DNA of 64,000 nucleotides from Haplodiscus bocki. Its lineage: Eukaryota. This document shows, piece after piece, positions 1,123 through 61,726 of this stretch. Under the pieces are notes generated by a model. That model saw only the letters and a program-made list of their open reading frames with translations, searched no databases and was not told the DNA's origin. The translations under genes and the position numbers were made by a program. Position 1 is the first letter of the stretch. Each line of letters starts with the position of its first letter. The DNA lies in NCBI GenBank assembly GCA_965655095.1, contig OZ296654.1, positions 39,618,001 through 39,682,000 on the forward strand, read 5' to 3'.

Positions 1123-1153
1123 ACTGGGCATATCTAACGTTGGATTTTGAACA

Positions 1154-7050: not shown

Positions 7051-7087
7051 CAGTAATTTATGTTGGGACCCAAAATGGGGCCGGCTA

Positions 7088-13185: not shown

Positions 13186-13208
13186 TGCTTGCAGGCGGAA
13201 AAATCTTT

Positions 13209-13512
13209 GAATATTTTCGAAGAGGCGATGAAGGAATTTGGCTAAGACACAGTTTGAAATTGTCTTAGAATATTTTCAATAAGATGCGATTGGAATTTGG
13301 CTAACACACAACTTGAAATTGTCTCAGAATATTTTCGAAGAGATGCGATTGGAATTTGGCTAAGACACAATTTGGAATTGTCTTAGAATATTTTCGAAGA
13401 GATGCGATCGGAATTTGGCTGAGACAGAATTTGGAATTGTCTTAGAGTTTTTTCAATGAGAAGCGTTTGGAATTTGGTAAAGACATTATTTAAAAACGTC
13501 TTAGAAAATTTT
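13209..13512. repeat. 5 x 59-bp tandem repeat in LTR (also ~17743-18046)
   Basis: Unit GAATATTTTCGAAGAGATGCGATTGGAATTTGGCTAAGACACAATTTGGAATTGTCTTA, containing an internal TAAGACA...TGTCTTA inverted repeat. Confidence 0.9.
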
Positions 13513-17126: not shown

Positions 17127-17211
17127 TGTAATAATTATCAGAACAACATAACCCATACAAATACAGCTCCAGCAAAAACGGATTTTAGTTAAAAGGGTTG
17201 CTCACTGTTGG

Positions 17212-17229
17212 GCCTCACTGGTCGCACCA
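17212..17229 (-). promoter_or_regulatory. Primer binding site of gag-only element 1
   Basis: Minus strand TGGTGCGACCAGTGAGGC, 3 nt from the LTR. The TGGTGC-N5-GTGAGG pattern matches the 3' ends of elongator tRNA-Met or tRNA-Ile(UAU). Confidence 0.7.
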
Positions 17230-17232
17230 GTT

Positions 17233-30569: not shown

Positions 30570-31023
30570 CTTCTCACGCAGTCAACCATATTTTTTCCGC
30601 TTAAATTGCGAATCATTGCCATAATATTGATCGTTTTCCGGAAACCAAAATTATTCAATATGTGAATTTACTTATACAGATGGCAATATGCGTGTTTGTG
30701 TGTGTCGTGGAAGGAGGTTGAATTAAAATTAAAAGCAGGCTTTTAACTGGTTTGCACTTTTGATGAAAATAAAACTGTTGTTCTCTCCCCCTACCTTTCG
30801 AAAACAACTCTCTGACTGTTTCCATTTTTGACGTCTGAAAATGATTTCACTTCAACTAACCCTATAATTTACACCAGAAAATTCAAACAAAAAAATGAAT
30901 GTTACGAACACAAAAGTTCCCATCAAGGGGTTTAGGAAAACTATTGAATAAATCAATTTATTTGGTCTGAACTATTTGTTTTAGTTTATTTATTTCTCTT
31001 TATTTAACTTGTGTTTTTTTCAG

Positions 31024-31186
31024 GTGTTGTGGATATTCTTTCCTGTCTCTATTTCCTGACGTTCCCCATGATAAAAGTGTTCTACGACCAGTTCCTGCCC
31101 CTAGAACCCTGTCTGGTGGACCAGTTCATCCTTTGGTTTATCCCTCTCGTGTCTCTTTTTCTCATGACGGCCATATGCTTTAACAG
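31024..31186 (+). CDS. GPCR coding exon 2 (TM2-TM3)
   Basis: Acceptor TTTTTTTCAG, phase 1 matching exon 1. Translates (S)VVDILSCLYFLTFPMIKVFYDQFLPLEPCLVDQFILWFIPLVSLFLMTAICFN(R) with TM2 Asp and TM3 Cys. Donor AG|GTTCGT, phase 2. Confidence 0.85.
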
Positions 31187-31222
31187 GTTCGTTGGAAATA
31201 CCACCCCCTCCCCCAGATGAAA

Positions 31223-32574: not shown

Positions 32575-34512
32575 AGGTGTGAATATTCACACTACAACAT
32601 GATGCCACCATCATGAACTGCGCCTACTGATTATGACAAGTCGGATCGTCATTGGGTGATGCCAACACGACTAAGTTAAAACAGACGGAGCAGGCAAGCT
32701 TCAGAGACAATCAAAGCGAATTGTGACTGAACGTGGTTTTTTTCTAAGTTACAGGCCTGATGTAATTACGTTTAGCGAAGGAGATAAATAAAGCCACTCA
32801 ACTGCGTGTGGTCTTTGCGAAGGATGCGGTATTCGTCCTTCCATCGGATTTGTGTTCCACCATTCCATTGATGTGTTACATCGGATAGTGATTAAATTAA
32901 CTGGCGGATAAACTGGCGGTGAAACACCTGGGAAAACAGTTGGCATCATATGGACTACAAGGAGCAAAACAAACCCTCTCTTCAGTGAGGGCCAAATCGG
33001 AATAACCTGTAGACTCAAACTGAGTCGTCCACATCAATGTTCCAGCATTTTAAGATCACTAAAAAACAGCAATTAAATTCAATGAATGGACAACTAAATG
33101 AAACATGGTTAACTTTATTATGGGAGAAATTTCAATTTTCAGGAGCGTGTTTTAAGTGTATTGTTACAAATTTCTAAGTGTTTAACCTAAGCTTTAAATT
33201 CATCAACCAATCAAAATTCATTTGAGTTTCACATCGGTTTTTTAAGAAAAAGTCTTCAGTTGCTCAGAACTTCACGTTCAACCAAATGGTGTCATTTCTG
33301 ACGAGACTGTGTAAGATTTCCAGGCCTCAAATTGGTTTTTTTTCTGATTAAATATTGCTAATTTAGAATAAAATTGCAACATCAACCACTTCTTCCGACA
33401 GAGTATCAAATAAAACTCAAGCTTGCTGTTCAAAGCTTTTCTATACCAGTCCCAAATTTTTATGACCAGTCTGCGATCAAGTCTTGTGCACGAGAGGATT
33501 ATCCATTTTTTTCTCTGATACGTTCAGTACCTCGAGATTTTTGAGTCAATATTAAAAATGTCTTGACTTCAATTTTTAATTTTAAGAATGTCCATACTCA
33601 GTTATGAAGGATAGATTTCCATCATAACTTAATTTATAAACAACGTTACCAGAATTGTACAGTATATGCAAATGTGATTGGAAATTTTCATTTTTGCAGA
33701 ACATAGATTCCCCAGAATGTATTTGGGTGCTAATGTCCACCACTCAGGTTGTATTCTATGTGCTTCTCAAAATCGATAAAAATTGAAGTAAAAAAAATTT
33801 AACAGGAATTTGTTAATTTATGTTTCCCTCAGGAGTCTAAAGAGACTTAGCCCCGAGGCTTAGCCCTGGTAGAAACTTTGAATCCTCCTGGGAGATATTT
33901 TGATCTATAGTGTCAAGGTGAGATATTTCTGGCGCCAAATTGTCGCGGCTTTATTTATTTGATCTGCTTGTTGATGTTGTTGATGTTTAAGCCACAATAC
34001 TTCTTACTTTTTTGAGACCCGGGCTGAATCAAAAAACATGTTCGAATGTTTGCAAACTTTCCGTAACACCACAAAGGAACAACAAACGTTATTTTTTTGA
34101 TAAAGTTGAGACATAAGCAAATACATTCATGACGCCTCTTGGAAACTTAACATACGGAAAGTTATTCTGTAATAGCCCCCCTCCCCCACNNNNNNNNNNN
34201 NNNNNNNNNNNNNNNNNNNNNNNNNNNNNNNNNNNNNNNNNNNNNNNNNNNNNNNNNNNNNNNNNNNNNNNNNNNNNNNNNNNNNNNNNNNNNNNNNNNN
34301 NNNNNNNNNNNNNNNNNATTTGGTACTGTTATTTTAAAATGCTTTACAAAAATCCCCTTTTACCTCAGGCTGGCGATCATAGATCACACGTCAAGCATTT
34401 TTTCAGCGTTTGAGATATATAATTGGAAGGTTGTTCCAATTTTACACTTCCTGGCTTAATAAAACAAAAATAAACGACAGAAAAAAAACAAGATTTTTTA
34501 CTCCCTTTTCAG

Positions 34513-34761
34513 ATTGACTGCCGTCTGTTTTCCGATCCAGTACCCGCAATTTTTCTCAGTACGGAATGTGCGTCGGCTGATCTGTGGCTCCGTGCTCTAC
34601 TCAGCATCCACTGGAATGACGTTTGGCATGCTCTGTTTCTACTACCACGCCACCTTCACGAGCTGGCAGTACGAGGAGTCTTTCTGGATGATGATCAACA
34701 AAATCGCCACTCTGCATGTCATGGGACTGTACACAATGGCCATCTTCGGAATCGTCATAAG
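34513..34761 (+). CDS. GPCR coding exon 3 (ICL2, TM4, TM5)
   Basis: Acceptor CTTTTCAG, phase 2 matching. Translates (R)LTAVCFPIQYPQFFSVRNVRRLICGSVLYSAST...TLHVMGLYTMAIFGIVI. Donor AG|GTCACT. Confidence 0.85.
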
Positions 34762-35716
34762 GTCACTTTCATAGCATGTTTTCTGAAAAATATTCTTTTT
34801 GACGATATTTTATTGCGATTATATTGTTTGACACCTTGCACATTGAATATCTCCTTAACCACCGAAGGCGTTTTGATAAAAACTGGACACTGTAAAAAAA
34901 GCGTTCAAGTTTTTTTGTGATAGATTCTAGGCCTCAATGGGAACTACAACGTTTTGCACAGTGAATTATTAAACTTTCCGATTATCTAAATTTTGAAGAA
35001 AGTTGACCTTTTGAGGCTTTTTGTTCAGATTTTCAATGTTCTCAGCACATTAGGAAGGTGAACAAACTCATGTCTTTGTGTAGTATAAATGTCTCTTCTG
35101 ATAAAAAGTTTAAACACGCATGATTTTTTCAATATTATATCGTCACTCTGTAGGACGAGTAGCCATCATGTATCAAATAGATCCGTTTATCTCTTTGCTT
35201 TGATGCAATAACGATTTTTCAAGTTTCTTTTCCATTTGACAGAAGGTGAAACGGCCTACGTTTCCAGAAATATCTGTTGAAGATGTGTTTAAGAAATATA
35301 GCTCAGTGATTGAGTGACAAGGAGGCTCGAACAAATTTCCTTCAGCTAAGAACTTCAATAAATGAATTATTCTATTTTCCTCAAACGTGGACAAAAACCG
35401 ATAATCGGAAAATTGAATCAGAACACTTGAGTTGTATACGAAAAATAGTTTAAATTTTTATTATTACATGTCAAAAAATTCAAAGTTGAAAAACATAGAC
35501 GCAACAACTAGCGTTGACTATTGGCTCAATTGAGCGAACAAAAAAAAACTGCTGGATGGCTTGTTCTTGTTGATTGACTGCTCGAATCCCTACGTCAGAA
35601 ATACACCGCCCAAGCTAGTAGTAAAATGGGAGAATTCCTTAAGATCCAAATCCAATGAATATCTTCTCATTTTCGGTCAAGTTACGTGTTTTTGGAAATA
35701 TTTCGTCATCGAATAA

Positions 35717-38700
35717 TGTGAGATTTGTGCCATCGTTTTTTTTTTAAATGTTAATTAAATTTTAATAGTCAATACTCGATAGGATATAAGATGAAAACAA
35801 GAATATTGGTTAAATGAGAGCCAATGAGATTGCTCTACGAGAGTAAACAGCAACCGCAGCATCTAATTTAAAAGTTGGTCTAATTCGAACCCCAACTTTA
35901 ACGTCCATTTTCTCGAAGACTATTATAGATAGAGCAAAACGGTTTGCACCAATGAAAACTACATTCCAAGACGAACAAGTTGGGTGATTTTCACCGCATT
36001 CTAAAAATTAAAAGTTGTCGAAAAATTAAAACGAAAATTATTACGGTCCGGAAAATGGTAAAATCGTGATTTCACAGTTCAGTTGCAACTTTAGAAGCGT
36101 ATAAAAATGAAAGCGGAGTGAAAACAAAATGTCATCAATACAAAAGGAATACAATAGGAGTGCTTTTTGGAGTGAATTTTGACCACGCGCACGGCCGCCA
36201 CCACCCCACGTATTAGCATATTTACGCTCTCGCTGCTCAAAATCAGACCGGTTTTTTTAATGTTCCCCAATGTTTGCTTGCTTATTTCTCAAAGATGAAA
36301 AAAGATATCGACGAACGGTTTTCACCATTAAAAACTACATCTATAGGAAAACTTAAGTTTGGAATATGAGCAAAATCGGACGAATTTAAGATATTGAAAA
36401 ATTATAGTAAACGAAAAGTACACTCCCGAAATTGCCAAATTGACTTCAGTTAAAAATTCATTTTGAGCGAACCACGCATCAGAAAAGGCTTGTATTAGTC
36501 TTAATCGGATGATATTTAAATGGACTAATGTCCCTGAAAAGATGAATTGATTATATTCAGTCATAATCTATTCAGTCATAATCATATTCAGTCTCAGGAG
36601 AACTGAGTAAGAAATCGCCAAAAAACGCCCAAAATAGCCTAAAATCGTCAAAAATCGCAGTTTTTCCGCTTATTAGTTAACGAGTAGCCAAAATAGAAAT
36701 TAACCATATTACTAGCGATTGAAAACTTTTTATTAGGAGGAATGAAGAATAACAATAGAACAAGTTTAGCAAGCTAAAAATGGCCGCCCCGCAAATTTAC
36801 AACAAGCTAAAACCACGGATTTTGGAAAATGTCGACTTGCAAAACGGCTACCCCCCGCACCTTTTTGAAGAGAGAAACCTGAAAATTTAACATAATGTTC
36901 CTAACAACCTCCCCCAGGAAAGTTACCAAGGATTTTCCGAAACTTTGCCTGTACGTTGAGAAAATCGACTTTGAAGGTGGACCCAGATAGTGAAAAATGG
37001 CCAAAATAGTTACTTTTGCGGAAAAGTGAATAACTTTTTTTTCAGACCAGCTAGAGAGCTCATCTTTTCGTTAAAATACTCTTACTTAAGTGTACTAACG
37101 AGAAAATACCACCCGCGCGCTGGGAAAACTTTATATGTTGAGAAAAATGACATCAAAATGACCAAAAATCGATTTTTCGGACATGGAATTTTGACCACTT
37201 TCAGAAAATCATATTTTTTTTCGACCATGAATATTGAAAATAACTATAACAAGTTATATACTGCCAAAAACTACATTGAATACCGCGTGTAGTGATCTGC
37301 TCATTTTATATTCACGATGTATATGATAGACGCAATTAATTATTGAATTTTAGACAAAAACTACGCCTTTTTTCGGACATTTATTTTTGCATGGATTCTA
37401 TGACGGGAATGGTTAGGGAAGATGTTTTAACCACTTACTTTGGAAGTACTTGGTCACGCGCGACGAATAAAAAAGCTGACGCATCAGCCGAAAGGGGTTG
37501 TTAATCAAAATGGCGACATAAACGAATGGAAACGAAGAGGAAAATTTTAGTCATTCTTTCACCACCCCCGTTTTGCCAGTGGATACGACCAAATACAATT
37601 AATCATAACTAATGTAAGCAAAAAAAAATAAACACCGATTAGTACCAAAACTGATGATTACCGTACCGAAGTGAAATAAACGAAATAACCAACGAATATT
37701 CAATAAGTCATTTTATAAATTATTGGACTCGAATAACCGGATGACTGACAGTAATGCCGAAAGTAATTGAATGGTACCGAAAGCCAGAAAAGTGGCTGAA
37801 AACGGAACTCTCCATTATTAATAGATGACGAATAGACCAAAATGTGATAAGATTGGAAACGAGTAAGACGAATGACTAAAATGATTAATTCGATGAAAAT
37901 ACACCCGAAGACGAACGAAAAAGTGAAGTGCTAGGCGCACAAAGTGAGTTGCAATCTGGAGAACGGTTTGCTACTTTGCTGTCAACGGATAGAGTACGAG
38001 TCTTTGAGTCCGGGACTAAAGATTGCAGGTTTACTTCAACAACCCTTGTTAGAGAGTCCGGGACTTTTTAACATTAGATTGTGGTCCGGGATCATAGTTT
38101 GTTGTCTTGACTGAATTGGGAAGTTGGACTTGGCCAGAATCTTTTGAGATGTTCTGCTTTAACGCCGTGAGACGCGGGTTAGAGAGTAAATTGGGCCCCA
38201 GCGGTGGTTGAACCGTGGATTAGTTGGAAATAGCAGTCCGGGACTGTTTTGCATCACTCCAAGAACGTTAGAGACTGGCGGCGAAATAATAAAGCACAAC
38301 TTCATCATTTTCGTAAGCATTCGTTAATTGAGTACCTTTCAATTCTTCCTTCGGGAAATCTTCTTGTTGTTGTAACCCCGTTTAATCTGAGTTGTTTATT
38401 GGTTCTGTGAACAATATATTACTCAAAGTATTATCCATTATTTAATCGATATCCAGTAATAAAAGTATTAATCAATGAAAGATATTATTTAGCATGATTG
38501 ATTATTCCATTACTTTGTGTCATTTAATTAACTTTGAGATAGTTTCTCACGAGAAAACATTTTATTTAACAATCAAGAGCTACGAGACACTCCTTAAAAG
38601 AAGAATCAAGACAGAACCGCGTTTCTTAGCGCATCTTACCCCCACCGCCTCCGAAATATTAGACTTGTCTTTTCTTTCGGAGTTATAAATTTTTTGTGGA

Positions 38701-38843
38701 TGCTCCGCCAATCCCCCGTCTCGTGGATCTGGTACACGTGTTTAAAGGAGTAGTAGTGGAGCAATTTAAAAACAGACTAGAAAAACTCTCAGTGATTCGA
38801 TTCTTCTTTGGCGATTGTTAAAGCTACTTTTCAAAAATCTACA
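35717..38843 (+). repeat. 5' LTR of gag-only element 2
   Basis: Direct repeat of 40438-43584. Confidence 0.95.
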
Positions 38844-38844
38844 G

Positions 38845-38864
38845 TGGCGCTCCTGGATGGGCTC
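38845..38864 (+). promoter_or_regulatory. Primer binding site, tRNA-Asn-like
   Basis: TGGCGCTCCTGGATGGGCTC 1 nt after the LTR. Close to the metazoan tRNA-Asn complement TGGCGTCCCTGGGTGGGCTC. Confidence 0.75.
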
Positions 38865-38958
38865 ATCTCTGTTTTGATTTATTCTTCTACCCTTTAAGTC
38901 AAAATTTCTTGTTTTCCCAGTTATTCCCCTTCCTGTTATTCTCTGGTTCTTTTACCCG

Positions 38959-39821
38959 ATGGAGAGCGACGAAGACAACACCCCACAGCAGCAGCAAGAG
39001 GAAGGCGACACCGACACAGGTGGTAAAAAGAAATGCTCCAGTAAGTCCCATCCTTGTTTCCACTCTCAGACTCCAGTAGGAAGGCCCAAAGACGTGAAGC
39101 TCAGTGCAAGTTGTATGAACTTCAATGCGAACTGGAAAAACTCAAACTGGAAGCAGAAGACGACTCAGAAGAATCAGACGTCGCAGAAAACATTTGTCGA
39201 AGAAAATCTAGAACGGTATACCAAGAATGCCCCATTAAACCCGAGAAATTTCCGGGTACATTTTTTTCTCGTTGGGAACAGTGGGTCAAGCATTATAAAT
39301 CGGTAGTTAAAGCTAACATATGGTCTGATGCGCAAGCGATTGAGGCCCTTCCTGCTTGCCTAACTTCATGGGCTCTTGAAGAATTTGAAACCGTACCCCG
39401 CCATTATGTTGAAAAAGTTCTAGGGAAGAAGACGCCAAATTTTGATGCATTACTAGAAGTACTTGAACTTAAAATGCAACAATACCGCAGTAAGAGAGCC
39501 GCAAGATCTGAGTTCAAAGCAGTAAAACAAATGGAAAACGAAAGCTTGAAAGATCATTTCCGAAGATTACGTTACTTGGGAGATTTAGCACTTTCAGAAA
39601 AATCACACAAAGAAAAAGATGAGAATTTACGTGATCAGTTTTTGGATGGACTCTTCGACCTTCGGTTGCAACAAAAACTCTTTGAAGACGAAACGGACCG
39701 CAATTTTTGCGAGGTTTTATACAGGGCAGAAGAACTGGATCTCATCCAGAAAAATTCTGAAGAAAGACGCGGATCACTGCTGTATTTTTTCCGGGATGTG
39801 AGAACGACCGACCAAGGATAA
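38959..39821 (+). pseudogene. gag: Ty3/gypsy-type gag capsid ORF with a frameshift near 39055
   Basis: ATG 38959 (MESDEDNTPQQQQ) shifts into frame 39054-39821: PIKPEKFPG..FSRWEQW...ANIWSDAQAIEALPACLTSWA...KQMENESLKDHFRRLRYL (MHR-like)...LRDQFLDGL. No CCHC knuckle seen. Confidence 0.8.
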
Positions 39822-40437
39822 CCAGAAGCCTCTGGGAGGAAGGAGCCATCGTCGTGACCGTAAGACTGAAATTATCTTAATAACTCTAAATTATTGTAAA
39901 CACTCTACCCTCCTGTATTTATTTGCCCCATAAATGAGTGAAGTTATTTTGTCCCGTATTTAAGAAGTCCCTTCTCAGGTCTCTCCCTGCTTGGACAAAA
40001 AAAGATGAAAGAAATAGGTTAGATAAAAGTTGGAAAACGATAAAAAGAACGCGGTTAATAACCTCCCAGTTTTTGTTGAATTCAATCTGACTTACAAATT
40101 GTTGCTTGTCAGTTGTCTGCTTGATCTTGATAAAAAAAATAGTTTTACGAAGAACGAAATATACGTTGGCTGGATCAAAATAACTGAGAGAAACGGAATC
40201 AAACTGGTGTTTTGGAATTAAAGGAAAAAAAAGAAGCAGCGAAAACGCAAAATCCTTTGTTTGTGTCATGTTGAAGTGTTTCTAATTGCAGTAGAACTAA
40301 TATTTGTGGAAATTAGATATTAAAATTGAAAATGATAGAATGCAACCTGACCAGACAGTCCTTAAGAAAATAGGAACGATGCGAAAAATTTAATAAACCA
40401 ACTACTCAGGAGAAGTAGTAGTCCAAGTGGGGGGAAA

Positions 40438-43400
40438 TGTGAGATTTGTGCCATCGTTTTTTTCTTTAACTGTTTATTAAATTTTGATAGTCAACTAAAA
40501 TTACTTAAAGTGAAAGGTACTCGATAGGATATAAGATGAAAACAAGAATATTGGTTAAATGAGAGCCAATGAGATTGCTCTACGAGAGTAAACAGCAACC
40601 GCAGCATCTAATTTAAAAGTTGGTCTAATTCGAACCCCAACTTTAACGTCCATTTTCTCGAAGACTATTATAGATAGAGCAAAACGGTTTGCACCAATGA
40701 AAACTACATTCCAAGACGAACAAGTTGGGTGATTTTCACCGCATTCTAAAAATTAAAAGTTGTCGAAAAATTAAAAGGAAAATTATTACGGTCCGGAAAA
40801 TGGTAAAATCGTGATTTCACAGTTCAGTTGCAACTTTAGAAGCGTATAAAAATGAAAGCGGAGTGAAAACAAAATGTCATCAATACAAAAGGAATACAAT
40901 AGGAGTGCTTTTTGGAGTGAATTTTGACCACGCGCACGGCCGCCACCACCCCACGTATTAGCATATTTACGCTCTCGCTGCTCAAAATCAGACCGGTTTT
41001 TTTAATGTTCCCCAATGTTTGCTTGCTTATTTCTCAAAGATGAAAAAAGATATCGACGAACGGTTTTCACCATTAAAAACTACATCTATAGGAAAACTTA
41101 AGTTTGGAATATGAGCAAAATCGGACGAATTTAAGATATTGAAAAATTATAGTAAACGAAAAGTACACTCCCGAAATTGCCAAATTGACTTCAGTTAAAA
41201 ATTCATTTTGAGCGAACCACGCATCAGAAAAGGCTTGTATTAGTCTTAATCGGATGATATTTAAATGGACTAATGTCCCTGAAAAGATGAATTGATTATA
41301 TTCAGTCATAATCTATTCAGTCATAATCATATTCAGTCTCAGGAGAACTGAGTAAGAAATCGCCAAAAAACGCCCAAAATAGCCTAAAATCGTCAAAAAT
41401 CGCAGTTTTTCCGCTTATTAGTTAACGAGTAGCCAAAATAGAAATTAACCATATTACTAGCGATTGAAAACTTTTTATTAGGAGGAATGAAGAATAACAA
41501 TAGAACAAGTTTAGCAAGCTAAAAATGGCCGCCCCGCAAATTTACAACAAGCTAAAACCACGGATTTTGGAAAATGTCGACTTGCAAAACGGCTACCCCC
41601 CGCACCTTTTTGAAGAGAGAAACCTGAAAATTTAACATAATGTTCCTAACAACCTCCCCCAGGAAAGTTACCAAGGATTTTCCGAAACTTTGCCTGTACG
41701 TTGAGAAAATCGACTTTGAAGGTGGACCCAGATAGTGAAAAATGGCCAAAATCGTTACTTTTGCGGAAAAGTGAATAACTTTTTTTTCAGACCAGCTAGA
41801 GAGCTCATCTTTTCGTTAAAATACTCTTACTTAAGTGTAATAACGGGAAAATACCACCCGCGCGCTGGGAAAACTTTATATGTTGAGAAAAATGACATCA
41901 AAATGACCAAAAATCGATTTTTCGGACATGGAATTTTGACCACTTTCAGAAAATCATATTTTTTTCGACCATGAATATTGAAAATAACTATAACAAGTTA
42001 TATACTGCCAAAAACTACATTGAATACCGCGTGTAGTGATCTGCTCATTTTATATTCACGATGTATATGATAGACGCAATTAATTATTGAATTTTAGACA
42101 AAAACTACGCCTTTTTTCGGACATTTATTTTTGCATGGATTCTATGACGGGAATGGTTAGGGAAGATGTTTTAACCACTTACTTTGGAAGTACTTGGTCA
42201 CGCGCGACGAATAAAAAAGCTGACGCATCAGCCGAAAGGGGTTGTTAATCAAAATGGCGACATAAACGAATGGAAACGAAGAGGAAAATTTTAGTCATTC
42301 TTTCACCACCCGCGTTTTGCCAGTGGATACGACCAAATACAAATAATCATAACTGATGTAAGCAAAAAAATAAACACCGATTAGTACCAAAACTGATGAT
42401 TACCGTACCGAAGTGAAATAAACGAAATAACCAACGAATATTCAATAAGTCATTTTATAAATTATTGGACACGAATAACCGGATGACTGACAGTAATGCC
42501 GAAAGTAATTGAATGGTACCGAAAGCCAGAAAAGTGGCTGAAAACGGAACTCTCCATTAGTAATAGATGACGAATAGTCTAAAATGTGATAAGATTGGAA
42601 ACGAGTACGACGAATGACTAAAATGATTAATTCGATGAAAATACACCCGAAGACGAACGAAAAAGTGAAGTGCTAGGCGCACAAAGTGAGTTGAAATCTG
42701 GAGAACGGTTTGCTACTTTGCTGTCAACGGATAGAGTACGAGTCTTTGAGTCCGGGACTAAAGATTGCAGATTTACTTCAACAACCCTTGTTAGAGAGTC
42801 CGGGACTTTTTAACATTAGATTGTGATCCGGATCATAGTTTGTTGTCTTGACTGAATTGGGGAGTTGGACTTCGCCAGATTCTTTTGAGATGTTCTGCTT
42901 TAACGCCGTGAGACGCGGGTTAGAGAGTAATTTGGGCCCCAGCGGTGGCTGAACCGTGGATTAGTTAGAAATAGGAGTCCGGGACTGTTTTGCATCACTC
43001 CAAGAATGTTAGAGAAGGCGGCGAGTTATTGAAATACAAGTTATTTGTTTTCTCAATCATTCGTTGATTGAGTACCTTTCAATTCTTCCTTCGGGAAATC
43101 TTCTTGTTGTTGTAACCCCGTTTTATCTGATTTGTTTATTGGTTCTGTGAACAATATATTACTCAAAGTATTATCCATTATTTAATTGATATCCAGTAAT
43201 ACAAGTATTAATCAATGAAAGATATTATTTAGCATGATTGTAATATTCTATTACTTTGTGTCATTTAATTAACTTTGAGATAGTTCCTCATCAGAGAACA
43301 TTTTATTTAACAGTCAAGAGCTACGAGACACCCCTTAAAAGAGGAATCAAAACAGAACCGCGTTTCTTAGCGCATCTTACCCCCACCGCCTCCGAAATTT

Positions 43401-43584
43401 TAGACTTTTCTTTTCTTTCGGAGTTATAAATTTTTTGTGGATGCTCCGCCGATCCCCCGTCTCGTGGATCTGGTACACGTGTTTAAAGGTGTAGTAGTGG
43501 AGCAATTTAAAAAGAGATTAGAAAAACTCCCAGTGATTCGATTCTTCTTTGGCGATTGTTGAAGCCACTTTTCAAAATTCTACA
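40438..43584 (+). repeat. 3' LTR of gag-only element 2
   Basis: Preceded by PPT (40425-40437) and followed by TSD AATAA. Confidence 0.95.
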
Positions 43585-46500
43585 AATAAGTTCCAAGGAA
43601 ATTGTTCTTGACCACATCCACTCGAAAGCCTTTTTACATACGAGCAGCTGAAAGTAAAAATTTTACCTACAATGCTTTAGAAAGTTCATTTACACCGTTT
43701 CTTTTCGGAAGAAAACCGTTGTTAGCTACGGCAACGAAGTGTTATATGAATAACTGCAATAAAAATGCAACACATTTTCTTGTAACTCGAGTACGTTTTC
43801 TTACAAGATACTCCAGAGAGTCAGGTACAGCTAGAAAAGTACCTTCAATAAAAAAATACTTCTGAACGTTGTTTATTCAACGGTTTTCAAAAACTTTTTT
43901 TTGCATAAAAATCACTCAGACGAAAATGTAGCTTTCTTGACTGCCAACTTTTTAGTGAATTAAAAATGCCAACAGGTTAATTAGTCTCAGAGCTGAGGAC
44001 AATCAAACAAAAAATCTTGAAAAATCTGCGAAAACAACAACAAGTTGCAAACAAAAAAGCATTGTTGTTTCACCAGAAGCCCTGAAAAAAAGTGAAACGC
44101 TGCAAGTTGGCGCGTTCCATCGTCGACCATGACCATGGGGACAAAAATCGGAACAGTTATCAGGTTATTGCGAGAAAGTGTGTTTCACAACGAAAACTAT
44201 CAGTAGTTGCTTTTGAAAACTTCTGCTTTCATTCATAGGGGTAACAAAAATGTCTTGCTTTCGCGGCTCAAAAACCTTTAAAATCAAAACTGTTGAATTT
44301 TTGCAGAATATTGTTGCGCGGGGAAGTAGATTTTGGTTCAATTTAATGTTGACAAAAACTTATTGCTTTCTTGGTGTGTGGCTGTTATTGATTAAACGAA
44401 CTTAAACCTCAAATTTGCCTTGCCGACCCGCGTAAACAAAGTAGATCGTGAATTCGCTAGAAAGAACTTAGTGGACAGCTATTGAGTGGCTGAAGGTTTT
44501 GTCAAAAATTTATTCAACGCGAGCAATTTTGTTATAAAAACTGGGCAAGTTATGCTTCCAAATACAATGAATGCAATGTCAAATTTGGTAGCGAGTTTAC
44601 AGGGGACGGTACTGGTTTAGGCGCAGAAAGCTTTGGTTCTGAATTCACTCTATTCCAATATCAATCAAAGTAAGAACGCGAGCAGTTTTACCATACAATG
44701 TTATTTGATCAAAATTTATTAACACTCAGAATTTTATGCCAGTATTATCAATTTAAATTTTTCAAACTAAATTTCATAGATAATATTGTTGCACGCGCTT
44801 TTAATTGACGCAAAAATGAAATACAAAAATAACAGTAGCTCCGGTACTGATAATTAAGCAATACCTTTTCTCATCTTGCAGGAGTTGAGTTGCTTTTGAG
44901 CACCATCGGTTTGCTCTGTTTTAAGTTTGTGCTAGAACGGAGAATATAATCATCCGTCTTTTCTAGCAGTTTAATTTCTAAGTGAACTTCTAAGTCACTT
45001 TTAGTTACGACTAAGTAATTCACGTAATGAATCAACCAGGCGAGTTCTCTAGGGCCAGTTCATAGTTGGGCCAGTTCATAGTCGTCAACCAGTAGAAAAG
45101 ATCTAGGGATTTTGTTGACCGCTTGCTCAATTTCGGTCAGATGTTTGGGTTAGTAACTAAGATTGGGTAACTCGCTTTATAGCGTAGCAATGGAGCGATT
45201 TCTCCTATGTTCAGGCAATTACCATCGGATAACCAATGAACCTGATTCTGATCGAAACTGGGTTACTAAATAGTTTTATCTAATAGGACTCAGCATCATT
45301 GCACTTCAATGGAGGCAGCCTGAAAAGGCACAATCCCAAATGGCAGAACCACTGAGCACTTTTTTTTAAGTTTCTGACAATTGTCAATGGACTCTTGTTA
45401 AGAGTGCTCTTGTTCAGAGCAATTTCCGTTGTTTGGTGATTTCAGTACGTATCGGTGTGCTGTTTATAGTCCTTTTCGATGCACTTTTGCAAAAAAAAAC
45501 GATTTTCTGAGAGTCTTTGCATAGTAGATTTCGTGCCCGAATAAGAAGGATTTTCCAAATTTCAGAGGTTTCAAAGTTTTTGAGAGAAAAGAGAGTTGAA
45601 ATTTCAGTGTTTGCTAATTTCTGTGTTCGTTGTTGACGGTAGGTGATCACGAGAGTTATGATTTTTGCTGTTTTTGGCCGGCCGTTTAGTTTTTCCGAGC
45701 CCTCGTACTTTTCAAGGTTATGACAAAGTACGGTAGACCTTACGCCAAGGAGCATCAAATGTGGTGATCCTCTAAAAGAAGTCTAAAATTGAACTCTTGG
45801 GAAGCAAGGTGTGCCGTTCGTGAAGCAATAAAATCAATCACCGGGAACGGGGTGTAGGAAATAGAAAAACTTCGTTGCGATTCGTTTTGGGCATGTTAAC
45901 GAATTTTTGAAGTTTCAAATTGTGCAAATCGAACTTCGTTACCGCTCTCCAACAACCATTCCTTCAAATGGTAAGTAACTGTTAATACCTCTATCATGTC
46001 ATTTTCTGAATTGAAAACTAGCACAGTTTAGCCTTATGGCTACCGCGACAATAAATATCACAAAATTTCTCCGAACTGGCAGTTGTGAAAGTTTGTCGAA
46101 AAAAAGGTTTTACATGCCCTTATTGTTTCTTTGTGCGAATTTAGGTACACTTTTCAGTTGAACTTTTGCTCGTTTTTTATCTTCCATGGTATTCCAGGAA
46201 AAACGAAACGAAAACGAAAAATAGGAGCTAAGATGCTTAGCGCTAGGCTTGCGAAAAGCAAGTCTCGTGCTTTTTATGATTGCTGCGGTGATGGAAATTT
46301 TCGCAGAAAATGCGGATCAGACGAAAGAACAATTTGCAGCTCCAAAATGGAAAAAAGTTGTTGAGAAAACTAATAGTAGTAATTTCCATAAGAATCGCTC
46401 AAAACTTTAGTAGACCCAAAAATGCCAAAACTCACGGTTGGTTTCTGGTAAAATTTTTTTATCAGATTCAAAATTTTTGTACGACCCGTAAAAAACAACA

Positions 46501-47180
46501 GATTTTCTTTCGCGATGCGATCATTTTCCCCAGTTTTTTCAAGCAAAAGTTGCATAAGAAATTGGAAAAAATTGCACACCTTCCATTTGATGTTTCAGTT
46601 CAACAGCACCCAATCAATTTATGCAACAAACCAACCAACCCAATTTTGTAAATACAAATAAGTGGTTGAAAATGGAGTTCTTCAGGTTTTTTGGAATTTT
46701 TTCTTCATAACTCGCCGGAAAAAAGCAAAACTTCGAGGAAAGATCAGATGAACCAACTAAGACAAATAATCATCACCCTAGAGGGCCAAAAATTTTCAGT
46801 GTAACTTTTTCTTCGCCAAAAGTTTCGTTCTTGTTATTTTTTTGTGAAAAATGTTAAGAGATTTGCAGATTTTGGGTAAAGTAAGTCATCCAAACTTAAA
46901 AATATTAAAATAGTCTTTTCAACTCATTTCAACCCTCTAAATTTTAAAATGACTTTTCCGATAAAATTTAAAAATGCATGCAGATAGGCAGATAAAAGTC
47001 TTCATTCACTTTATTCAGAAGACAAAAGTTATAAAAATTCATTGAAGCACAACATTGAATGGTTTGCACATTTTTTCAAAGATGTTATCAATAAAAGATG
47101 GTTACGGTTGAATTTCTTGATGATTTTTTCCGATAATGATATGTTTCGCAATCCCTAAAGTTTTCATGTTTTGTTTTCAG

Positions 47181-47979
47181 TTCTCTGATATCAGCGGCAT
47201 CTCTCAAAAAACGAATCCGAAGAAAAGCGAGTTTGATCGGATCGCGTTTCAAAGAGACCATCTCCAAGGACGANNNNNNNNNNNNNNNNNNNNNNNNNNN
47301 NNNNNNNNNNNNNNNNNNNNNNNNNNNNNNNNNNNNNNNNNNNNNNNNNNNNNNNNNNNNNNNNNNNNNNNNNNNNNNNNNNNNNNNNNNNNNNNNNNNN
47401 NNNNNNNNNNNNNNNNNNNNNNNNNNNNNNNNNNNNNNNNNNNNNNNNNNNNNNNNNNNNNNNNNNNNNNNNNNNNNNNNNNNNNNNNNNNNNNNNNNNN
47501 NNNNNNNNNNNNNNAATGACGTTATCATAAACAGTCCCCTAGAAGGCAGAAAAATTGGAAAAAATGGGCGGGGCAAGGAATGTCGCAACAAAATGTTCAT
47601 CAGCAGTAATATTAGTAATAATAATATTATTAATTATAATCATAATAACCACCCAGTTAGAGGTTCTTGTCAATTATCATTTTGTGAAGATTCTATTCAG
47701 CAAGACCACAAAACCTTCTCACCCCAGTCACCGATAGAGGGCGTGGTTGGAGCTGCTCTCGCAGCAGCTGCCGCAGCCGACGAGAACCGAATCAGTCGAT
47801 GCGACTCGGATGAAACGTTATCGTGCAGTCGATCGGGAATAACTCTTGCAGCCAATCAGAGATGCGCACCGTCAAATTATAGTCGACAAAGCAGTGCAGT
47901 CAGGATTAACAATGTCGAGGGAGAGGCTGGAGGAGGGGGCAATGGGAACCGGGGAAGGGAGACGCCTAAAGATTTGAAG
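47181..47979 (+). CDS. GPCR coding exon 4 (long intracellular loop 3), spanning N-gap 47274-47514
   Basis: Acceptor TGTTTTCAG, phase 2. Translates (S)SLISAASLKKRIRRKASLIGSRFKETISKD-[gap]-NDVIINSP...RGRETPKDLK, frame preserved across the gap. Donor AAG|GTTACT, phase 0. Confidence 0.7.
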
Positions 47980-48357
47980 GTTACTTGGGGGAGGGGGTCC
48001 CTAATAGTTCACATTGTTCGAGGATGTTCTGTATGGAGTATTTCATTCAAAATTTACATGGAGGACCTTTTGTTTAGTAGGTTGTTTAATAATTTCTATG
48101 AATCTACTAGAACTAAAAATCAACGGGTATCGAAAAATTATTGCCACTTGTTAAATTCTGAAGCGGATGGATCGATTTGTGGACATATCTCGATATTTGG
48201 TCATAAATTTAATCGTTAGCACGAAAGCAATATGTCACTTCAAGTTCATGTTTATATTCTAGTACTTAACTTGGTTTATAATTCAACTGCTAGACGCATT
48301 AGCTCAATTCATAACTCAGGTAATCTCGTCAGAAGTAACGATAAATTTTTTTTTCAG

Positions 48358-48446
48358 CTCACAAAAGCGCTGCTGGTAATTGCTCTTGCTTACGTCATCT
48401 TGTGCACCCCGTACATACTCTATCACCTCCTATTTCGCATCTACAT
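48358..48446 (+). CDS. GPCR coding exon 5 (TM6)
   Basis: Acceptor TTTTTTTTTCAG, phase 0. Translates LTKALLVIALAYVILCTPYILYHLLFRIY with the TM6 Pro. Canonical donor AT|GTAAGT. Confidence 0.85.
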
Positions 48447-49160
48447 GTAAGTCAGTTATAAAATCGTAACAAATTAGATGAAAATTAAATTAACTAGCAT
48501 ACATAAATCACCAGTCTATGAAATTAACCAGTGTGAAAAAACCTAATTGCGGGAAAAGTCCATCCTGATTCCACTGCCTCTTTCCCGCCAAGTTTTTCCA
48601 CTTTTTTACGCTGTCGGAAAAACGTGTGAACAGAATTTTTAATGGTCAAGTGTCCACGGACAGGAAATTAGACTACTTGTTTTCCATGATGCACATGGAA
48701 AATACTTGGAAATAAGTATGTTCACGTTGGAATGAATTATAAAATGATGGATGGGAGTTGCGGTCACAAAACGTATCTCTCAAAATATACTACGAGACAT
48801 AAATCAATTCCACTGCCGTCAAAATCGGTCAGCTTGAAAATTCCTTCTTTCACTGCCATGCAGAAAAATGCGACATTTCGGATTACATTCACTGAGCTGG
48901 AAAATTTAAGGATAAAAAATTGTTTATAAAAATAAATTGTGAGTGTTTATCACAAACGCCTATGATACAGTTCTGAAAGCTTCTGGAGTAGGTCTTTGAA
49001 GTTCCATGCAAAACCGAGTTGATTTTTTTTGTTTTAGCAATCATTGTTTACTGCTCAAAATCTTGTTCATTTTATAAATGTCTTCGAGATGTTTCGCAAC
49101 AAGAGGCTCAGCAATTCTGTGATATTTTCTGTTCACGGGGCCACGAAAAAAACATTGAAC

Positions 49161-52940: not shown

Positions 52941-55399
52941 TTCCATCACTTTTATTCATTTTTAGAATTAATTGTAACTATTAACTCAATTGTGTTTCAT
53001 TTTCTCCCCGATGTATTTCAAATGGCCATTTACCAGCCTTCTTTTTCCTTAGTGCATATGACAATTCTAAAAAGAACGTAATGTCTTTTCCTCCATTACA
53101 CTTCTTGCCTCTACTCTCCATTTTTCGATTTTATTTATTAATCTCTTGACTGTTCCATTGCCACGAAGCTTAAGGCTTGGGCAAATGATATGTCTATTTT
53201 CCCACCGTTTTTAGAACTTTTTTTGTTCNNNNNNNNNNNNNNNNNNNNNNNNNNNNNNNNNNNNNNNNNNNNNNNNNNNNNNNNNNNNNNNNNNNNNNNN
53301 NNNNNNNNNNNNNNNNNNNNNNNNNNNNNNNNNNNNNNNNNNNNNNNNNNNNNNNNNNNNNNNNNNNNNNNNNNNNNNNNNNNNNNNNNNNNNNNNNNNN
53401 NNNNNNNNNNNNNNNNNNNNNNNNNNNNTCAGGGGCTTCATTAAAAATCCATTGAAATCTAACGGTACGTGCTATCTCCGCATTTGATCGCCAGGGTTTT
53501 TCTAAAATACCTGACAAACAACAGACAAAATTTAGGCAATAAAAAATTTATATGAATCCTTTAAAATCATTCAAAAAGTGCAGGCTAACATATTTAATCA
53601 TATAAAAATTTCATGTAAATTTAGCTAGGGCTGTTCAGAATATTAATACATGTTTTTGGTAAGAAGATAAACCTTGAATGGGAAGGCGATGGATCTATCA
53701 GGATAGGTGATTGAGATACTGAAAGGTCATAATACTTTATTTGGTTAACCAGTCAGCCGTTTAACGGTGTCAAACCGTACTCTTGCTTGTAGTTTTTTTT
53801 GCTCATTTACAGATAATGTCGTGCTGTGGTGGAACGTTAATATATTAGTTTTAGTCGGCTTTGACGAAGCCGACCATGGTAGTGAGTTTGTTGTTTTAAC
53901 CTCACAGCGAAATGTCGTGGCTTCTTTTTTAGCAATCGAACGGCTATTCTTTAAAGTTTTAATAGTTACTGTATTTCTATACTACTGAATATATGACAAA
54001 AAAATTATGAAGTAAAAAAACAACCGTTCTATGATTCACCTAAATTTTTGGACCCATCCGATCCAATTCGGTTTCATGTTCACCTGCTGTCAGTACCCCC
54101 AAAAAATTTGTTCTACTTAGGCACTAAATGTCGCGGCAATTGTTCTGTTTGACATTAAAAACGATTGAGTATGAATTTAATTTCTCTTCTTGGCCAACTT
54201 TTATCGCGTATGTATCTCTACGTAAATGGAACTTTGCCAATAATAAAACAAAATTTACAAACAAGCAAGTTTTCGGTAAACAGTTTGTGTAATGCTGACA
54301 TTGACATCAACTAAGTTGATGTGACACTCGACTTCTACATTTCGCTCCATTATTATTGTTGATTCAGTACGAATATTCGGGGTTGTAGTCTTCGTCGCAT
54401 TATTTTTGGCCAAATGGTTTGCGAGCTTTTTTCCTAACAGTCCTGAGAATATCATAAAAACAAAATAGTAAGACAAGATTAATTTTTTTAAAATATGTAT
54501 GCTACCCAATCTTTCTCGTAGTCTACAGCTTAGTAAAACGACCTCCGCAAATTAAACTTTCCCGATATTCTCGACCCATCTTTGAATATTATATAGGACT
54601 TTTATATATAGTATATAGTATATAGGAATAATATATAGGGTTCTTCTGACCTTTTGGGTGGTAAGTCTAAATTTTCAGTTGGTTTGCTAGTTTCAGCCTA
54701 TTTTTTCATGTCACTTTCCTCATCAAAGCTCTGTCGTTAATATTTGTGGGCTTTGAAACTCCGATTTCACTCTTCTGTTCCTGCATCAGTTCCTCTGACG
54801 GTATTTCCTTTCGACGAGATTACACTTTCTCCCGGTTGCGGCCATGTCTGAAGTAATACCGGCGTTGAAAATAACTTCCGGTTTAAACTTTTACTTTTTT
54901 CTGTAGTTGCAGTGTGTTCCGTCCTCGCAACTGAAGCTTGTTAAAAAGCTGAAATCTTCGTGCCCGGGAGTTTCTCTCTTGATTTTTCTGGGAAACTTTT
55001 CTATGAATACTTTTTACTAACTGAGGTAAAAAGTTTTCGTTTCAGTGACTTTCTTTTTGAGCTGCGCGCTTTCGCCGTTTTCTGTGGATCATCCGTTGGT
55101 TGGTAATTTTCCATCATCGATTCTTCCGAATTATGTTAGCTGTTTTGGGTTTCGCCAAAATAGTTAAACCATCCTCTTTTAAAAAACAAGATTTGCCGTC
55201 CTTTTAAGTTCTCGTGGGCTCGGTTCTGGGTCTGTTACCGTGATGCATATCAAAAAGGCTTTCACGTAGACCAGTATGTACCATGATTTTTTTGCTTTTG
55301 ACGTTCCATTCACGTTTTTAATACAGCCGATTTTTACTTCTATTTGGGATTTTATCAGGCTTTCAAAAAATTTAATTGCGCTCATATTTGCTTGAGTAC

Positions 55400-59650: not shown

Positions 59651-61726
59651 TTGGATAGATTGAATTCAGTATTTTGTAAAACTGAATTTAAAAAATCCTT
59701 TTTACTGCGCCATGTTCTAATCTACGGTAAACACGAGTAAGTATGATTTTAGTTTTCTTCTTGGTCAACTATTACCGAGTATGAATTTTTATATAAATAG
59801 CACTTCGGTTATGGTACAGCAAAACTTACAAACAAGCATGTTTTTGTTAAATTTAATATGTAATGTATCAATTGATATCTAGTCCGGTTACATAGCCTTC
59901 GGTAACTACAAACTATACTGTGCTGCTATCTTGAAAAAATTCAAGATGCATCTTGATTAAAACCGATAGTTTTAGCTGTTTTCAGGGCTCTTTTTCCCCA
60001 CGCTATCTTATTCAAGTTTTCAATGTAATTTTCTTCAGAAGGGTTGTTTTTGGGCAATTTTATTCAAGCTTTCTTCAAAAAATTTCAAAAACCTTCAAAA
60101 GTCCTGTTTTTATCTATTTGAAATTCCGCTTGAATGAATGTGTGTGTATATGTGGGGAGCTCCTTTTTTACTCTTAATATAGCTTATAGTGCACCCAAAA
60201 ATTCCTGATCCTAATCTCATTTGCCTTTCGCAGACATTGACAAGCGTTATCGGTCAAATAAGCTGCATACAATTTGATAACCTGAATACGCTTTACTAAT
60301 TTATGCATTTTGACATGCAATATAAGCGTCATTTTTATCTTCTGTCCTAAATCATTGAGTGATTCCGACGAACATCCCTCTCCTTGTTTGCTGAGCCAGC
60401 GGTTTCAACACACGATGTAGTATACCAGATACCAGCAAATAGTTTGCTTTATTTTGTTAAAATTCTCCAAAATTTGATTTCGTGCGGCCTTAAATGTTGC
60501 AAACTGTCAATTGAATCTGGAGAAGTTTTAGAAGTTCTTGCCAGCAGTTGAGTGAACATACCAGTTTCAAAAAAGTATATAAACTGGAAACAATGGTGTC
60601 GCTATCAAAGGCCTCCACATCTGAGTAATCTGAGTAAAAAATTGAAGGTGAGCCGAAAAAGACCCTTCCTTGAAGATAAATATCAAATTCCTTTTTCGTT
60701 GGCAGGTCATATTACCCGTATTTTGATTTAATGCAAGGTAATAACTAATAGATTATTCCTATGATATTAAATTCAAGGTGGTACAAAAAAAACAGAAGTC
60801 TGAATTTTTTCAATTTTTCAGCTCATCTCAGATCTTCTCTTCGGAGTTTTCTCGGCCCGAATAAAGGTCGTTTAATACAGTGCCCGCTCAAAAGTATGAT
60901 CAAGGTGGGATGAACTCATGAAATTGAAAAAAACTTGATTCTGGGAACAGAATGTTAGTTTAAAAAATATTGTAGGACTGAAAGCTTCATGATTTTTCGT
61001 GAGGACTATCAGAATTTTTCAGTTTTCAAATCAGTCAATTTTTAGGATTTTTTGCCCCTCCATGTTGAAAATTTTCACTCAAATTTGCTCTTTAAGAACA
61101 ATTTTATTACTACTAACCATTACAGAGAACGTTCATAAATATTTGACGATTCAAATCTGTGGGAGCTTTCCATAACTTGACTATTTTTGCGGAGTTTCAA
61201 TTATTTCTGAATGAAAGGAATGTCTCATTTCTAAAGCATGGACAATGTATTCAGTTGACCGTTTTACTACATTAAGAAACTTTGAGCTGATTAAAAGCTT
61301 CAATCGTGTTATGAGTAGAAGTTTAAACTTAGTGGGATTTAAACTTATGAAATCTCCGTTGATGGAGAGAGAGAAAATGAGCAAAAGTTTCCGAGTGTTG
61401 CAAAACTGGCGCACTATATACATAAATGCCAACAGCAAATTAGTTCCACTTCAGTACTTCCGTTAAAATATACCACATGAAATTTGATGAGAAATCTTTG
61501 GTAATGAATGTATCACTTTTCGCAGCAAAATTCAGGTTGCATCGATCTTTCCCACTATTGATGATTTTTTGCGTTAAGTGTTAAACTATCAAAATAAACT
61601 GATTAACCGGTTTAGTGTGATTTATAACTTGTCCGTGCCCTACTCCTTTCGGAAACTTGTTTGGTTTTACCGATTACACAGCAACTCACCGGGATTTTTA
61701 AATGGAAGACTCCTAGGATATCTTGG

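What the first reader, a model, noticed from the sequence alone, without database searches (positions are those of the whole stretch)
35717..43584. Second gag-only element in which the LTRs make up ~80% of the length
Seen: 3127- and 3147-bp LTRs around a 1594-bp interior containing only a tRNA-Asn PBS, a capsid-type gag without knuckle, ~600 bp of non-coding DNA, a small hairpin (ACTACT-caggaga-AGTAGT, 40401-40419) and a PPT, with a perfect AATAA TSD. LTRs above 3 kb are unusually long for animal elements. Inference: a minimal capsid-encoding satellite retroelement with a cargo- or regulatory-laden LTR. It is inserted in the sense orientation in GPCR intron 3, where LTR promoter or poly(A) signals could affect the host transcript.
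Basis: partly seen in the sequence, partly recalled or inferred. Interest (0 to 1): 0.7.

Follow-up and report, generated by a model that had tools for sequence, protein, structure and literature searches.

The report
Gag-only LTR retrotransposon with 3-kb LTRs
This is a real 7.9-kb LTR retrotransposon in an intron of an animal receptor gene. It encodes only a shortened capsid protein and comes from a multi-copy family that probably borrows its copying enzymes from a related complete element, a lifestyle already known in plants and zebrafish.

Summary
The LTRs are 3127 and 3147 bp with TG..CA ends, flanked by a perfect AATAA target-site duplication. The interior is 1594 bp and holds a 20-nt PBS, one gag gene, 616 bp with no recognisable coding and a G-rich PPT.

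Gag folds as a retroelement capsid (best matches PNMA2, dArc1, MLV and Copia capsids) and has no zinc knuckle. The truncation is a family trait. At least 121 relatives of 75% identity or more end at the same place, and 54 of them are intact. Relatives at about 60% identity run on for another 160 residues to a CCHC knuckle, and one of them continues into a protease. Other copies also share the LTR end, PBS, leader and a mid-LTR stretch.

The best reading is a non-autonomous, capsid-only derivative of a Ty3/gypsy-like element, mobilised in trans. No cargo was found in the LTR, and the hairpin is at chance level.

Family-wide absence of pol is therefore inferred, not shown.

The kind is already known: TR-GAG in plants, BHIKHARI in zebrafish. 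Interest is moderate to low.

The parts
35712..35716 (+). 5' target-site duplication AATAA
   Evidence: Read directly. Identical to 43585-43589.
35717..38843 (+). 5' LTR, 3127 bp, TG..CA ends
   Evidence: Mismatches to the 3' LTR are about 0.4% over 35717-37966 and 5-9% over 38217-38843. No Pfam, Rfam or large internal repeat. The mid-LTR stretch 36818-37426 is colinear with ORF calls from 29 other clusters.
38845..38864 (+). Primer-binding site, 20 nt starting TGG, one base after the LTR
   Evidence: Conserved in read-through ORFs of other copies (P0060, P0123, P0126, P0137). The window copy differs from three of them by one inferred base. The Asn assignment rests on memory of tRNA-Asn T-arm sequences only.
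38865..38958 (+). Untranslated leader between PBS and gag ATG
   Evidence: Colinear with the upstream read-through of other copies.
38959..39060 (+). Gag N-terminal piece (residues 1-34 of intact paralogs), first reading frame
   Evidence: tblastn of P0002: residues 1-34, 82% identity. ORF list.
39051..39821 (+). Gag main piece (residues 32-287, coiled-coil helix plus two-lobed capsid domain), second reading frame. The frame break lies within 39051-39060 and the stop at 39819-39821.
   Evidence: tblastn of P0002: residues 32-287, 87% identity. AlphaFold model of the intact paralog P0002 has pLDDT 81.5. Foldseek top hits are PNMA2, dArc1, MLV, Copia and HIV capsids. No CCHC.
39822..40424 (+). 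3' interior with no recognisable coding
   Evidence: Stops in all six frames. No pol remnant found by tblastn with P0234 or P0100. Part of it (40054-40269) recurs at 2 other loci at 69-72% translated identity.
40401..40419 (+). Small hairpin (6-bp stem, 7-nt loop); not distinguishable from chance
   Evidence: 3 observed against 2.8 +/- 1.9 in shuffles.
40425..40437 (+). Polypurine tract AAGTGGGGGGAAA abutting the 3' LTR
40438..43584 (+). 3' LTR, 3147 bp
   Evidence: Carries a 23-bp insertion after LTR position 56 relative to the 5' LTR.
43585..43589 (+). 3' target-site duplication AATAA
34513..34761 (+). Host context: GPCR-like exon (end of TM3 to TM5) with AG acceptor and GT donor. The element starts 955 bp into the following intron.
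   Evidence: Pfam 7TM_GPCR_Srx, E 2.5e-4, below the gathering score. Splice sites read. Other + strand exon-like frames at 12076-12243, 31008-31217 and 48220-48447.

Best explanation
This is one copy of a multi-copy family of non-autonomous LTR retrotransposons in an animal genome. The family descends from a Ty3/gypsy-like element. It keeps the cis signals needed for replication: long LTRs, a tRNA primer-binding site and a polypurine tract. Its only gene is a Gag cut short just after the capsid domain, so it lacks the nucleocapsid zinc knuckle, protease, reverse transcriptase and integrase. Inferred mechanism: the LTR drives a genomic RNA, the RNA is packaged, reverse-transcribed and integrated by proteins of a related autonomous element (Gag about 60% identical, with a knuckle), and integration makes 5-bp duplications. 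The family's own capsid-only Gag probably co-assembles with the partner's Gag, and the open frame has been kept during the family's spread. This particular copy has a frameshifted gag and is probably a dead insertion sitting in a GPCR intron.
For: Shown:
- Complete LTR-element anatomy with TSD, TG..CA ends, PBS and PPT.
- Gag has a capsid fold and no knuckle.
- 311 relatives were found by word search. Of these, 121 are at 75% identity or more, none has a knuckle, and all end after ..RGPLL or ..TDQG as the window copy does.
- Every such member is colinear with the window copy, with no tail leading into other sequence.
- ORFs in four other copies read from the LTR end through the same PBS and leader into gag.
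- The mid-LTR stretch recurs in 29 clusters. Two of these sit on contigs of the same length as gag-bearing contigs (47005 and 501826).
- Relatives at about 60% identity (P0100, P0113, P0147) continue about 160 aa to a CCHC knuckle. The more distant relative P0234 has capsid, knuckle and aspartic protease.

Inferred:
- ORF-preserving selection. 54 of 121 members are intact at a median 87% pairwise identity, against roughly 3% expected under neutral decay. Site variability is 4-5% in the capsid core against 9-14% at the N-terminus.
Against: - Absence of pol in the other copies is therefore inferred from gag ends only.
- No partner element with matching LTR or PBS was identified, and its pol was not seen.
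- The 3' interior was found at only two other loci.
- The intact-fraction argument is biased by the length window of the search and by an assumed indel rate.
- A Gag without a nucleic-acid-binding knuckle is not obviously able to help its own RNA.
Confidence: 0.75

Rival explanations
1. One-off deletion derivative. The family's active members carry pol downstream of the short gag, and this copy alone lost it, either after insertion or during one faulty reverse transcription.
For: Pol-lessness of other copies was not observed directly. The 3' interior recurs at only two other loci. This copy is already decaying: gag is frameshifted and the PBS is one base off the other copies.
Against: The gag end is shared by all 121 close relatives, none of which reads on into other coding sequence. 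A Ty3/gypsy-type lineage that lost its knuckle but kept pol would be unusual. The PBS, PPT, both LTRs and a perfect TSD are intact. No pol remnant is present.
Confidence: 0.12
2. The truncated capsid-only Gag is kept mainly as an interfering protein, in the manner of Ty1 p22, Fv1 or enJS56A1. It would poison or tax the partner's particle assembly, or it could be a host-exploited product as proposed for zebrafish Bik Gag, rather than a helper for its own RNA.
For: The ORF is conserved in many copies. It consists of a coiled-coil helix plus a capsid domain only, about 60% identical to knuckle-bearing Gags. The precedent of developmentally required Bik-1/2 Gag comes from PMC12067270.
Against: There are no expression or functional data. 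High copy number with LTRs, PBS and PPT is what a replicating parasite looks like. The two readings are not mutually exclusive.
Confidence: 0.1
3. Chance or assembly artefact: two unrelated repeats flanking a gag fragment.
For: None specific. The window does contain assembly gaps elsewhere.
Against: Two 3.1-kb direct repeats at 98% identity have exact TG..CA ends. The PBS and PPT abut them, and a 5-bp TSD flanks the whole. No N run lies inside 35717-43584.
Confidence: 0.02

Closest known systems
[quoted passage not shown]
   Same: LTRs, PBS and PPT with a single gag ORF and no pol. Multi-copy, and presumed to be mobilised in trans.
   Different: TR-GAGs are under 4 kb with short LTRs (about 485 bp in TR-GAG1), and their Gag keeps a zinc-finger motif. 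This element is 7.9 kb, 80% of it LTR, and its Gag stops before the knuckle. The host is an animal, and the TR-GAG authors found no candidate in Drosophila.
BHIKHARI-1/2 (Bik) gag-only endogenous retrovirus families of zebrafish, PMC12067270, and chicken ENS-1 as cited there
   Same: Animal LTR families whose copies encode Gag but neither pol nor env. Gag has an N-terminal coiled coil plus a capsid domain without a classical knuckle. A partner is presumed to supply pol.
   Different: Bik elements are relatives of lokiretroviruses (vertebrate retroviruses) with a 617-aa Gag. This Gag is 287 aa, and its relatives carry Retrotrans_gag, PNMA-like and CCHC features typical of Ty3/gypsy-type elements. 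Sequence relatedness to Bik Gag was not tested.
LARD / TRIM non-autonomous LTR elements
   Same: LTR, PBS and PPT retained, no enzymatic genes, trans-mobilisation (general knowledge; also summarised in PMC3286476).
   Different: LARDs and TRIMs have no ORF. This element keeps a conserved gag.
Ty3/gypsy-derived capsid proteins (PNMA2, Arc/dArc1)
   Same: Best structural matches of the Gag model are PNMA2 capsid (E 1.7e-4) and dArc1. PNMA Pfam hits occur in relatives.
   Different: Those are single-copy domesticated host genes without LTRs. This is a dispersed repeat with full retrotransposon ends.

Membership tests
LTR retrotransposon (structural definition) | Two direct long terminal repeats with TG..CA ends, flanked by a short target-site duplication | tested here: met
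   The LTRs are 97.9% identical in aligned columns, and the TSD is a 5-bp AATAA.
LTR retrotransposon (structural definition) | tRNA primer-binding site next to the 5' LTR and a polypurine tract next to the 3' LTR | tested here: met
   The PBS starts TGG one base after the LTR, and AAGTGGGGGGAAA abuts the 3' LTR. Which tRNA primes it was not testable (no tRNA gene in the window).
Ty3/gypsy (Metaviridae) superfamily | Pol with the order PR-RT-RH-IN and an RT that groups with Ty3/gypsy | not testable with these tools
   The element has no pol, and the partner's pol was not found. Indirect support only: relatives carry Retrotrans_gag (PF03732) and CCHC, and one carries a gag-type aspartic protease.
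Retroelement capsid (CA) fold | Two all-helical lobes matching known retroviral or retrotransposon capsids | tested here: met
   AlphaFold2 on a 34-sequence alignment gives pLDDT 81.5. Foldseek PDB top hits are PNMA2, dArc1, MLV, Copia and HIV CA at probability 0.96-1.0, with modest TM-scores of 0.26-0.35 on the query. BFVD hits are retroviral and metaviral Gag. Pfam on the window protein itself gave no hit.
Nucleocapsid-bearing Gag | CCHC zinc knuckle at the C-terminus | tested here: not met
   No CX2CX4HX4C motif in the window Gag or in any of the 121 close relatives. It is present in the relatives at about 60% identity.
TR-GAG | Single gag ORF between LTRs, no RT motif | tested here: met
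   Met for this copy.
TR-GAG | Short element (<4 kb) in a plant or algal genome | tested here: not met
   The element is 7868 bp. The host has a GPCR-like gene and BEL/Pao elements, so it is an animal.
Non-autonomous family (as opposed to a single deleted copy) | Many copies sharing the same pol-less interior with different insertion sites | tested here: inconclusive
   The shared gag truncation, LTR end, PBS, leader and mid-LTR are shown from proteins of other loci. The gag-to-PPT segment of other copies could not be read.
BHIKHARI-like gag-only ERV | Relationship to lokiretrovirus Gag | not tested
   No Bik sequence was at hand. Only the architecture was compared, from PMC12067270.

The most novel reading that the evidence does not exclude
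An invertebrate Ty3/gypsy-derived family has evolved into a capsid-only 'satellite'. Its knuckle-less Gag would be under selection because it co-assembles with, and so hijacks or throttles, the particles of a related autonomous element. Its 3-kb LTR would carry the regulatory load. That would be an animal counterpart of plant TR-GAG and of Ty1 p22-type copy-number control combined in one element.
Probability: 0.2. Interest if true: 0.6.

Novelty: new member of a known kind. Interest (0 to 1): 0.35.

Why it matters
Gag-only LTR families show that a capsid gene alone can be worth keeping for a genomic parasite. In zebrafish, such Gags have become needed by the host. A well-populated, knuckle-less family in an invertebrate would be a handy system for asking what a capsid-only Gag does: help its own RNA, parasitise a partner's particles, or restrain them. 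For annotation, the practical points are:
- This 7.9-kb block is a transposon, not host sequence.
- Its gag ORFs will appear as orphan 'proteins' in gene calls.
- Two different gag-only elements sit in introns of the same receptor gene.

Tried and rejected
- Spliceosomal intron. The gag frame break is flanked by GT..AG 29 nt apart, and removing those 29 nt would restore the frame. I rejected this because intact paralogs read straight through that stretch, so it is a plain frameshift.
- Deletion scar. MAFFT aligned the last 18 residues of the family Gag with the linker and knuckle of the longer relatives. Local alignment against shuffles gave p 0.3-0.99, so I make no such claim.
The two most conserved peptides had already drawn a blank, so the organism is not in those collections.
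- Antisense 116-aa ORF of the 3' interior as a proxy for copy structure. It gave only 2 hits, and the window's own ORF is not in the database, so the result is uninformative.
- LTR cargo. Ten open frames scanned against Pfam, Rfam at gathering and at E<=1, internal repeats, tandem repeats and a bacterial-type promoter/terminator scan (not relevant to a eukaryote) found nothing.
- PDB sequence search with the Gag profile gave 0 hits. Only the fold comparison worked.
- Relatedness to the other gag-only element in the window: none.
- GPCR exons searched singly against PDB sequences gave only E of about 0.9. One exon reached E 2.5e-4 against 7TM_GPCR_Srx.
- Organism identity: not obtained. The database carries no names or accessions for these proteins.
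Full report
**1. Observation**

The repeat finder, a self-BLAST and a MAFFT alignment agree on two direct repeats, at 35717-38843 (3127 bp) and 40438-43584 (3147 bp). Both begin TGTGAG and end CTACA. AATAA lies immediately outside each end, at 35712-35716 and 43585-43589. The interior, 38844-40437, is 1594 bp. One base after the 5' LTR comes a 20-nt PBS beginning TGG (38845-38864). A G-rich polypurine tract (40425-40437) abuts the 3' LTR. No assembly gap lies inside the element; the N runs are at 34190-34317, 47274-47514 and 53229-53428, and I left them alone.

The hairpin at 40401-40419 exists but is at chance level. The interior holds three such hairpins, against 2.8 +/- 1.9 in shuffles.

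**2. The gene**

The gag ATG is at 38959. The ORF from it closes after 115 codons, and the main open frame (39054-39821) is in another phase. Intact paralogs read straight through. tblastn places residues 1-34 of one such paralog at 38959-39060 and residues 32-287 at 39051-39818.

A GT..AG pair 29 nt apart around the break briefly suggested an intron. The paralogs rule that out.

Pfam does not recognise the window protein, and a PDB sequence search with the family profile gave nothing. An AlphaFold2 model of the intact paralog P0002, built on a 34-sequence alignment, has mean pLDDT 81.5. It shows a long N-terminal helix (residues 38-68) followed by two helical lobes. Foldseek against the PDB returns PNMA2 capsid (E 1.7e-4), dArc1, MLV, Copia and HIV capsids. 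BFVD returns retroviral and metaviral Gag and caulimovirid coat proteins. 'Capsid-type gag' is therefore supported. There is no CCHC motif.

**3. The family**

The word-index search found 311 relatives, all from ENA-only assemblies without names. Of these, 121 are at 75% identity or more to the window protein.
- 54 are full length and intact (274-276 aa, ending just after ..RGPLL, or 286-287 aa, ending ..TDQG like the window copy).
- Median pairwise identity among the intact ones is 87%.
- The window copy's nearest relatives are 89-91% identical.
- None has a knuckle.

Mapped back by tblastn, every one of these proteins is colinear with the window element and none has a tail leading elsewhere. 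Four longer ORF calls (P0060, P0123, P0126, P0137) start inside the LTR and read through the LTR end, the PBS and the leader into gag. Those parts are therefore shared too. In three of the four, the PBS codons imply one base different from the window copy.

A frame from the middle of the LTR (36975-37289) has 29 relatives, colinear over 36818-37426. Two of them sit on contigs whose lengths (47005 and 501826) equal those of gag-bearing contigs. The long LTR is thus a repeated family component, not a private oddity.

The antisense ORF of the 3' interior found only two loci. The database does not hold the window's own copy of that ORF either, so this says little.

**4. Relatives with more parts**

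Proteins at about 60% identity (P0100, P0113, P0147 and others; 410-440 aa) align up to about residue 270. They then continue about 160 residues to a CCHC knuckle. The exhaustive profile search of 1.84 billion representatives found only 410 hits. The longest, P0234 (785 aa), has capsid, knuckle and a gag-type aspartic protease. Other mid-length hits have capsid plus knuckle, with Retrotrans_gag or PNMA matches. The normal state of this Gag lineage is therefore CA-NC(-PR...), as in Ty3/gypsy-type elements, and the window family is a truncated offshoot.

MAFFT had suggested that the family's last 18 residues are a scar of the knuckle region. A shuffle test showed that this is not significant, so I do not claim it.

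**5. Constraint on gag (inference)**

From the codon make-up of the unbroken 255-codon piece, nonsense changes are 8.6% as frequent as missense changes. At the observed divergence, a neutrally decaying copy would stay open about 20% of the time for stops alone. With an assumed indel-to-substitution ratio of 0.1, that falls to about 3%. The observed figure is 54 of 121.

Site variability is 4-5% in the capsid core, against 9-14% at the N-terminus.

Both figures point to ORF-preserving selection during the family's spread. Both are rough, because the search has a length window and no codon alignments were available.

**6. LTR content and age**

The LTR has no Pfam match worth the name, no Rfam match, no sizeable internal repeat and only two tiny tandem repeats. 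'Cargo' is not supported; regulatory content cannot be judged from sequence.

LTR-LTR divergence is very uneven. It is about 0.4% over the first 2.2 kb and 5-9% over the last 0.6 kb, including a 45-bp patch with 16 mismatches. Two explanations fit:
- one LTR received a conversion tract from another copy, and the insertion is young; or
- the insertion is old, and the 5' parts of its LTRs were homogenised.

The lack of any Gag closer than 91% favours the second, but only if the database holds the whole genome. I therefore give no age.

**7. Host context**

On the + strand there are exon-like frames with transmembrane character at 12076-12243, 31008-31217, 34513-34761 and 48220-48447. Searched exon by exon, only the third reached a meaningful score (7TM_GPCR_Srx, E 2.5e-4, below the gathering score). 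PDB sequence searches gave E of about 0.9 to a TAAR and an opioid receptor.

The element starts 955 bp after the GT donor of the third exon and has the same orientation as the gene. 'Sense orientation in intron 3' therefore holds if the TM1 exon is counted as the first. Each LTR carries 3-5 AATAAA hexamers on that strand. Whether they act is untested.

**8. Mechanism**

The cis parts are shown. Trans-mobilisation by a knuckle-bearing relative, and co-assembly of the short Gag with the partner's Gag, are inferred. Nothing here shows transcription, packaging or recent movement of this copy. With a broken gag and a PBS one base off its relatives, this copy is most likely dead.

**9. What is known**

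- Gag-only LTR elements were named TR-GAG in plants and brown algae. They are under 4 kb, have LTRs of about 485 bp, their Gag has a zinc-finger motif, and none was found in Drosophila (PMC4350172).
- In zebrafish, the BHIKHARI-1/2 families encode only Gag (coiled coil plus capsid, no pol in any copy) and are thought to use a partner. Chicken ENS-1 is cited in the same paper as a non-autonomous variant (PMC12067270).
- Coding-free LTR elements are common in mosquitoes (PMC3286476).

The present element is therefore a new member of a known kind. It stands out by its 3.1-kb LTRs, its Gag cut right after the capsid domain, and its Ty3/gypsy-like rather than retroviral ancestry.

**10. Limits**

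- All three word-index searches and the one exhaustive search were used.
- I met no contig that I took for human.

Noticed in passing
window 58-8125 (+): A BEL/Pao LTR retrotransposon. Its LTRs (58-1088 and 7088-8125) are 98% identical and it has a CACAT target-site duplication. Gag is of the DUF1759 type, and RT, Peptidase_A17 and DUF5641 hits are present. Pol is split over at least six ORFs, so it is degraded.
   Followed up: partly
window 12699-18902 (gene on - strand): The 'first' gag-only-looking element. Its LTRs are 1670 bp and 99.5% identical, with internal 39- and 59-bp tandem repeats. The TSD is CTAC and the interior is 2.86 kb. Its 277-aa Retrotrans_gag ORF ends at the start of a knuckle-like CxxC and is unrelated in sequence to the gag studied here. 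It lies antisense in the intron after the TM1 exon of the same GPCR-like gene.
   Followed up: partly
window 38217-38843 vs 42958-43584: LTR-LTR divergence is concentrated in the last 0.6 kb (5-9% against about 0.4% elsewhere). It includes a 45-bp patch (38276-38320) with 16 mismatches. This suggests gene conversion in one direction or the other and makes LTR dating unreliable.
   Followed up: partly
window 38288, 38458 vs 3' LTR: Two AATAAA hexamers in the 5' LTR are absent from the matching positions of the 3' LTR. Three others (LTR positions about 1750-1960) are shared.
   Followed up: no
window 35717-47000: CpG observed/expected is about 0.85-1.4 in the element and flanks. There is no CpG depletion, which suggests little or no germline cytosine methylation in this animal.
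   Followed up: no
window 47233-48219 (+): A long open frame next to the TM6 exon, with Asn-, Ala- and Gly-rich low-complexity runs. It is probably the receptor's third intracellular loop. It is interrupted by the N run at 47274-47514, which I left untouched.
   Followed up: no
window 63484-63900: Three tandem copies of a unit of about 140 bp at 65-77% identity. There is also a dispersed 125-bp repeat pair at 54156-54280 and 59728-59851 (77% identity).
   Followed up: no
database proteins P0001-P0150, P0301-P0329: The public protein collection holds hundreds of bacterial-style ORF calls, some with TTG or GTG starts, from this family's gag and even from frames inside its non-coding LTR. They look like orphan 'proteins' but are transposon sequence.
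   Followed up: partly
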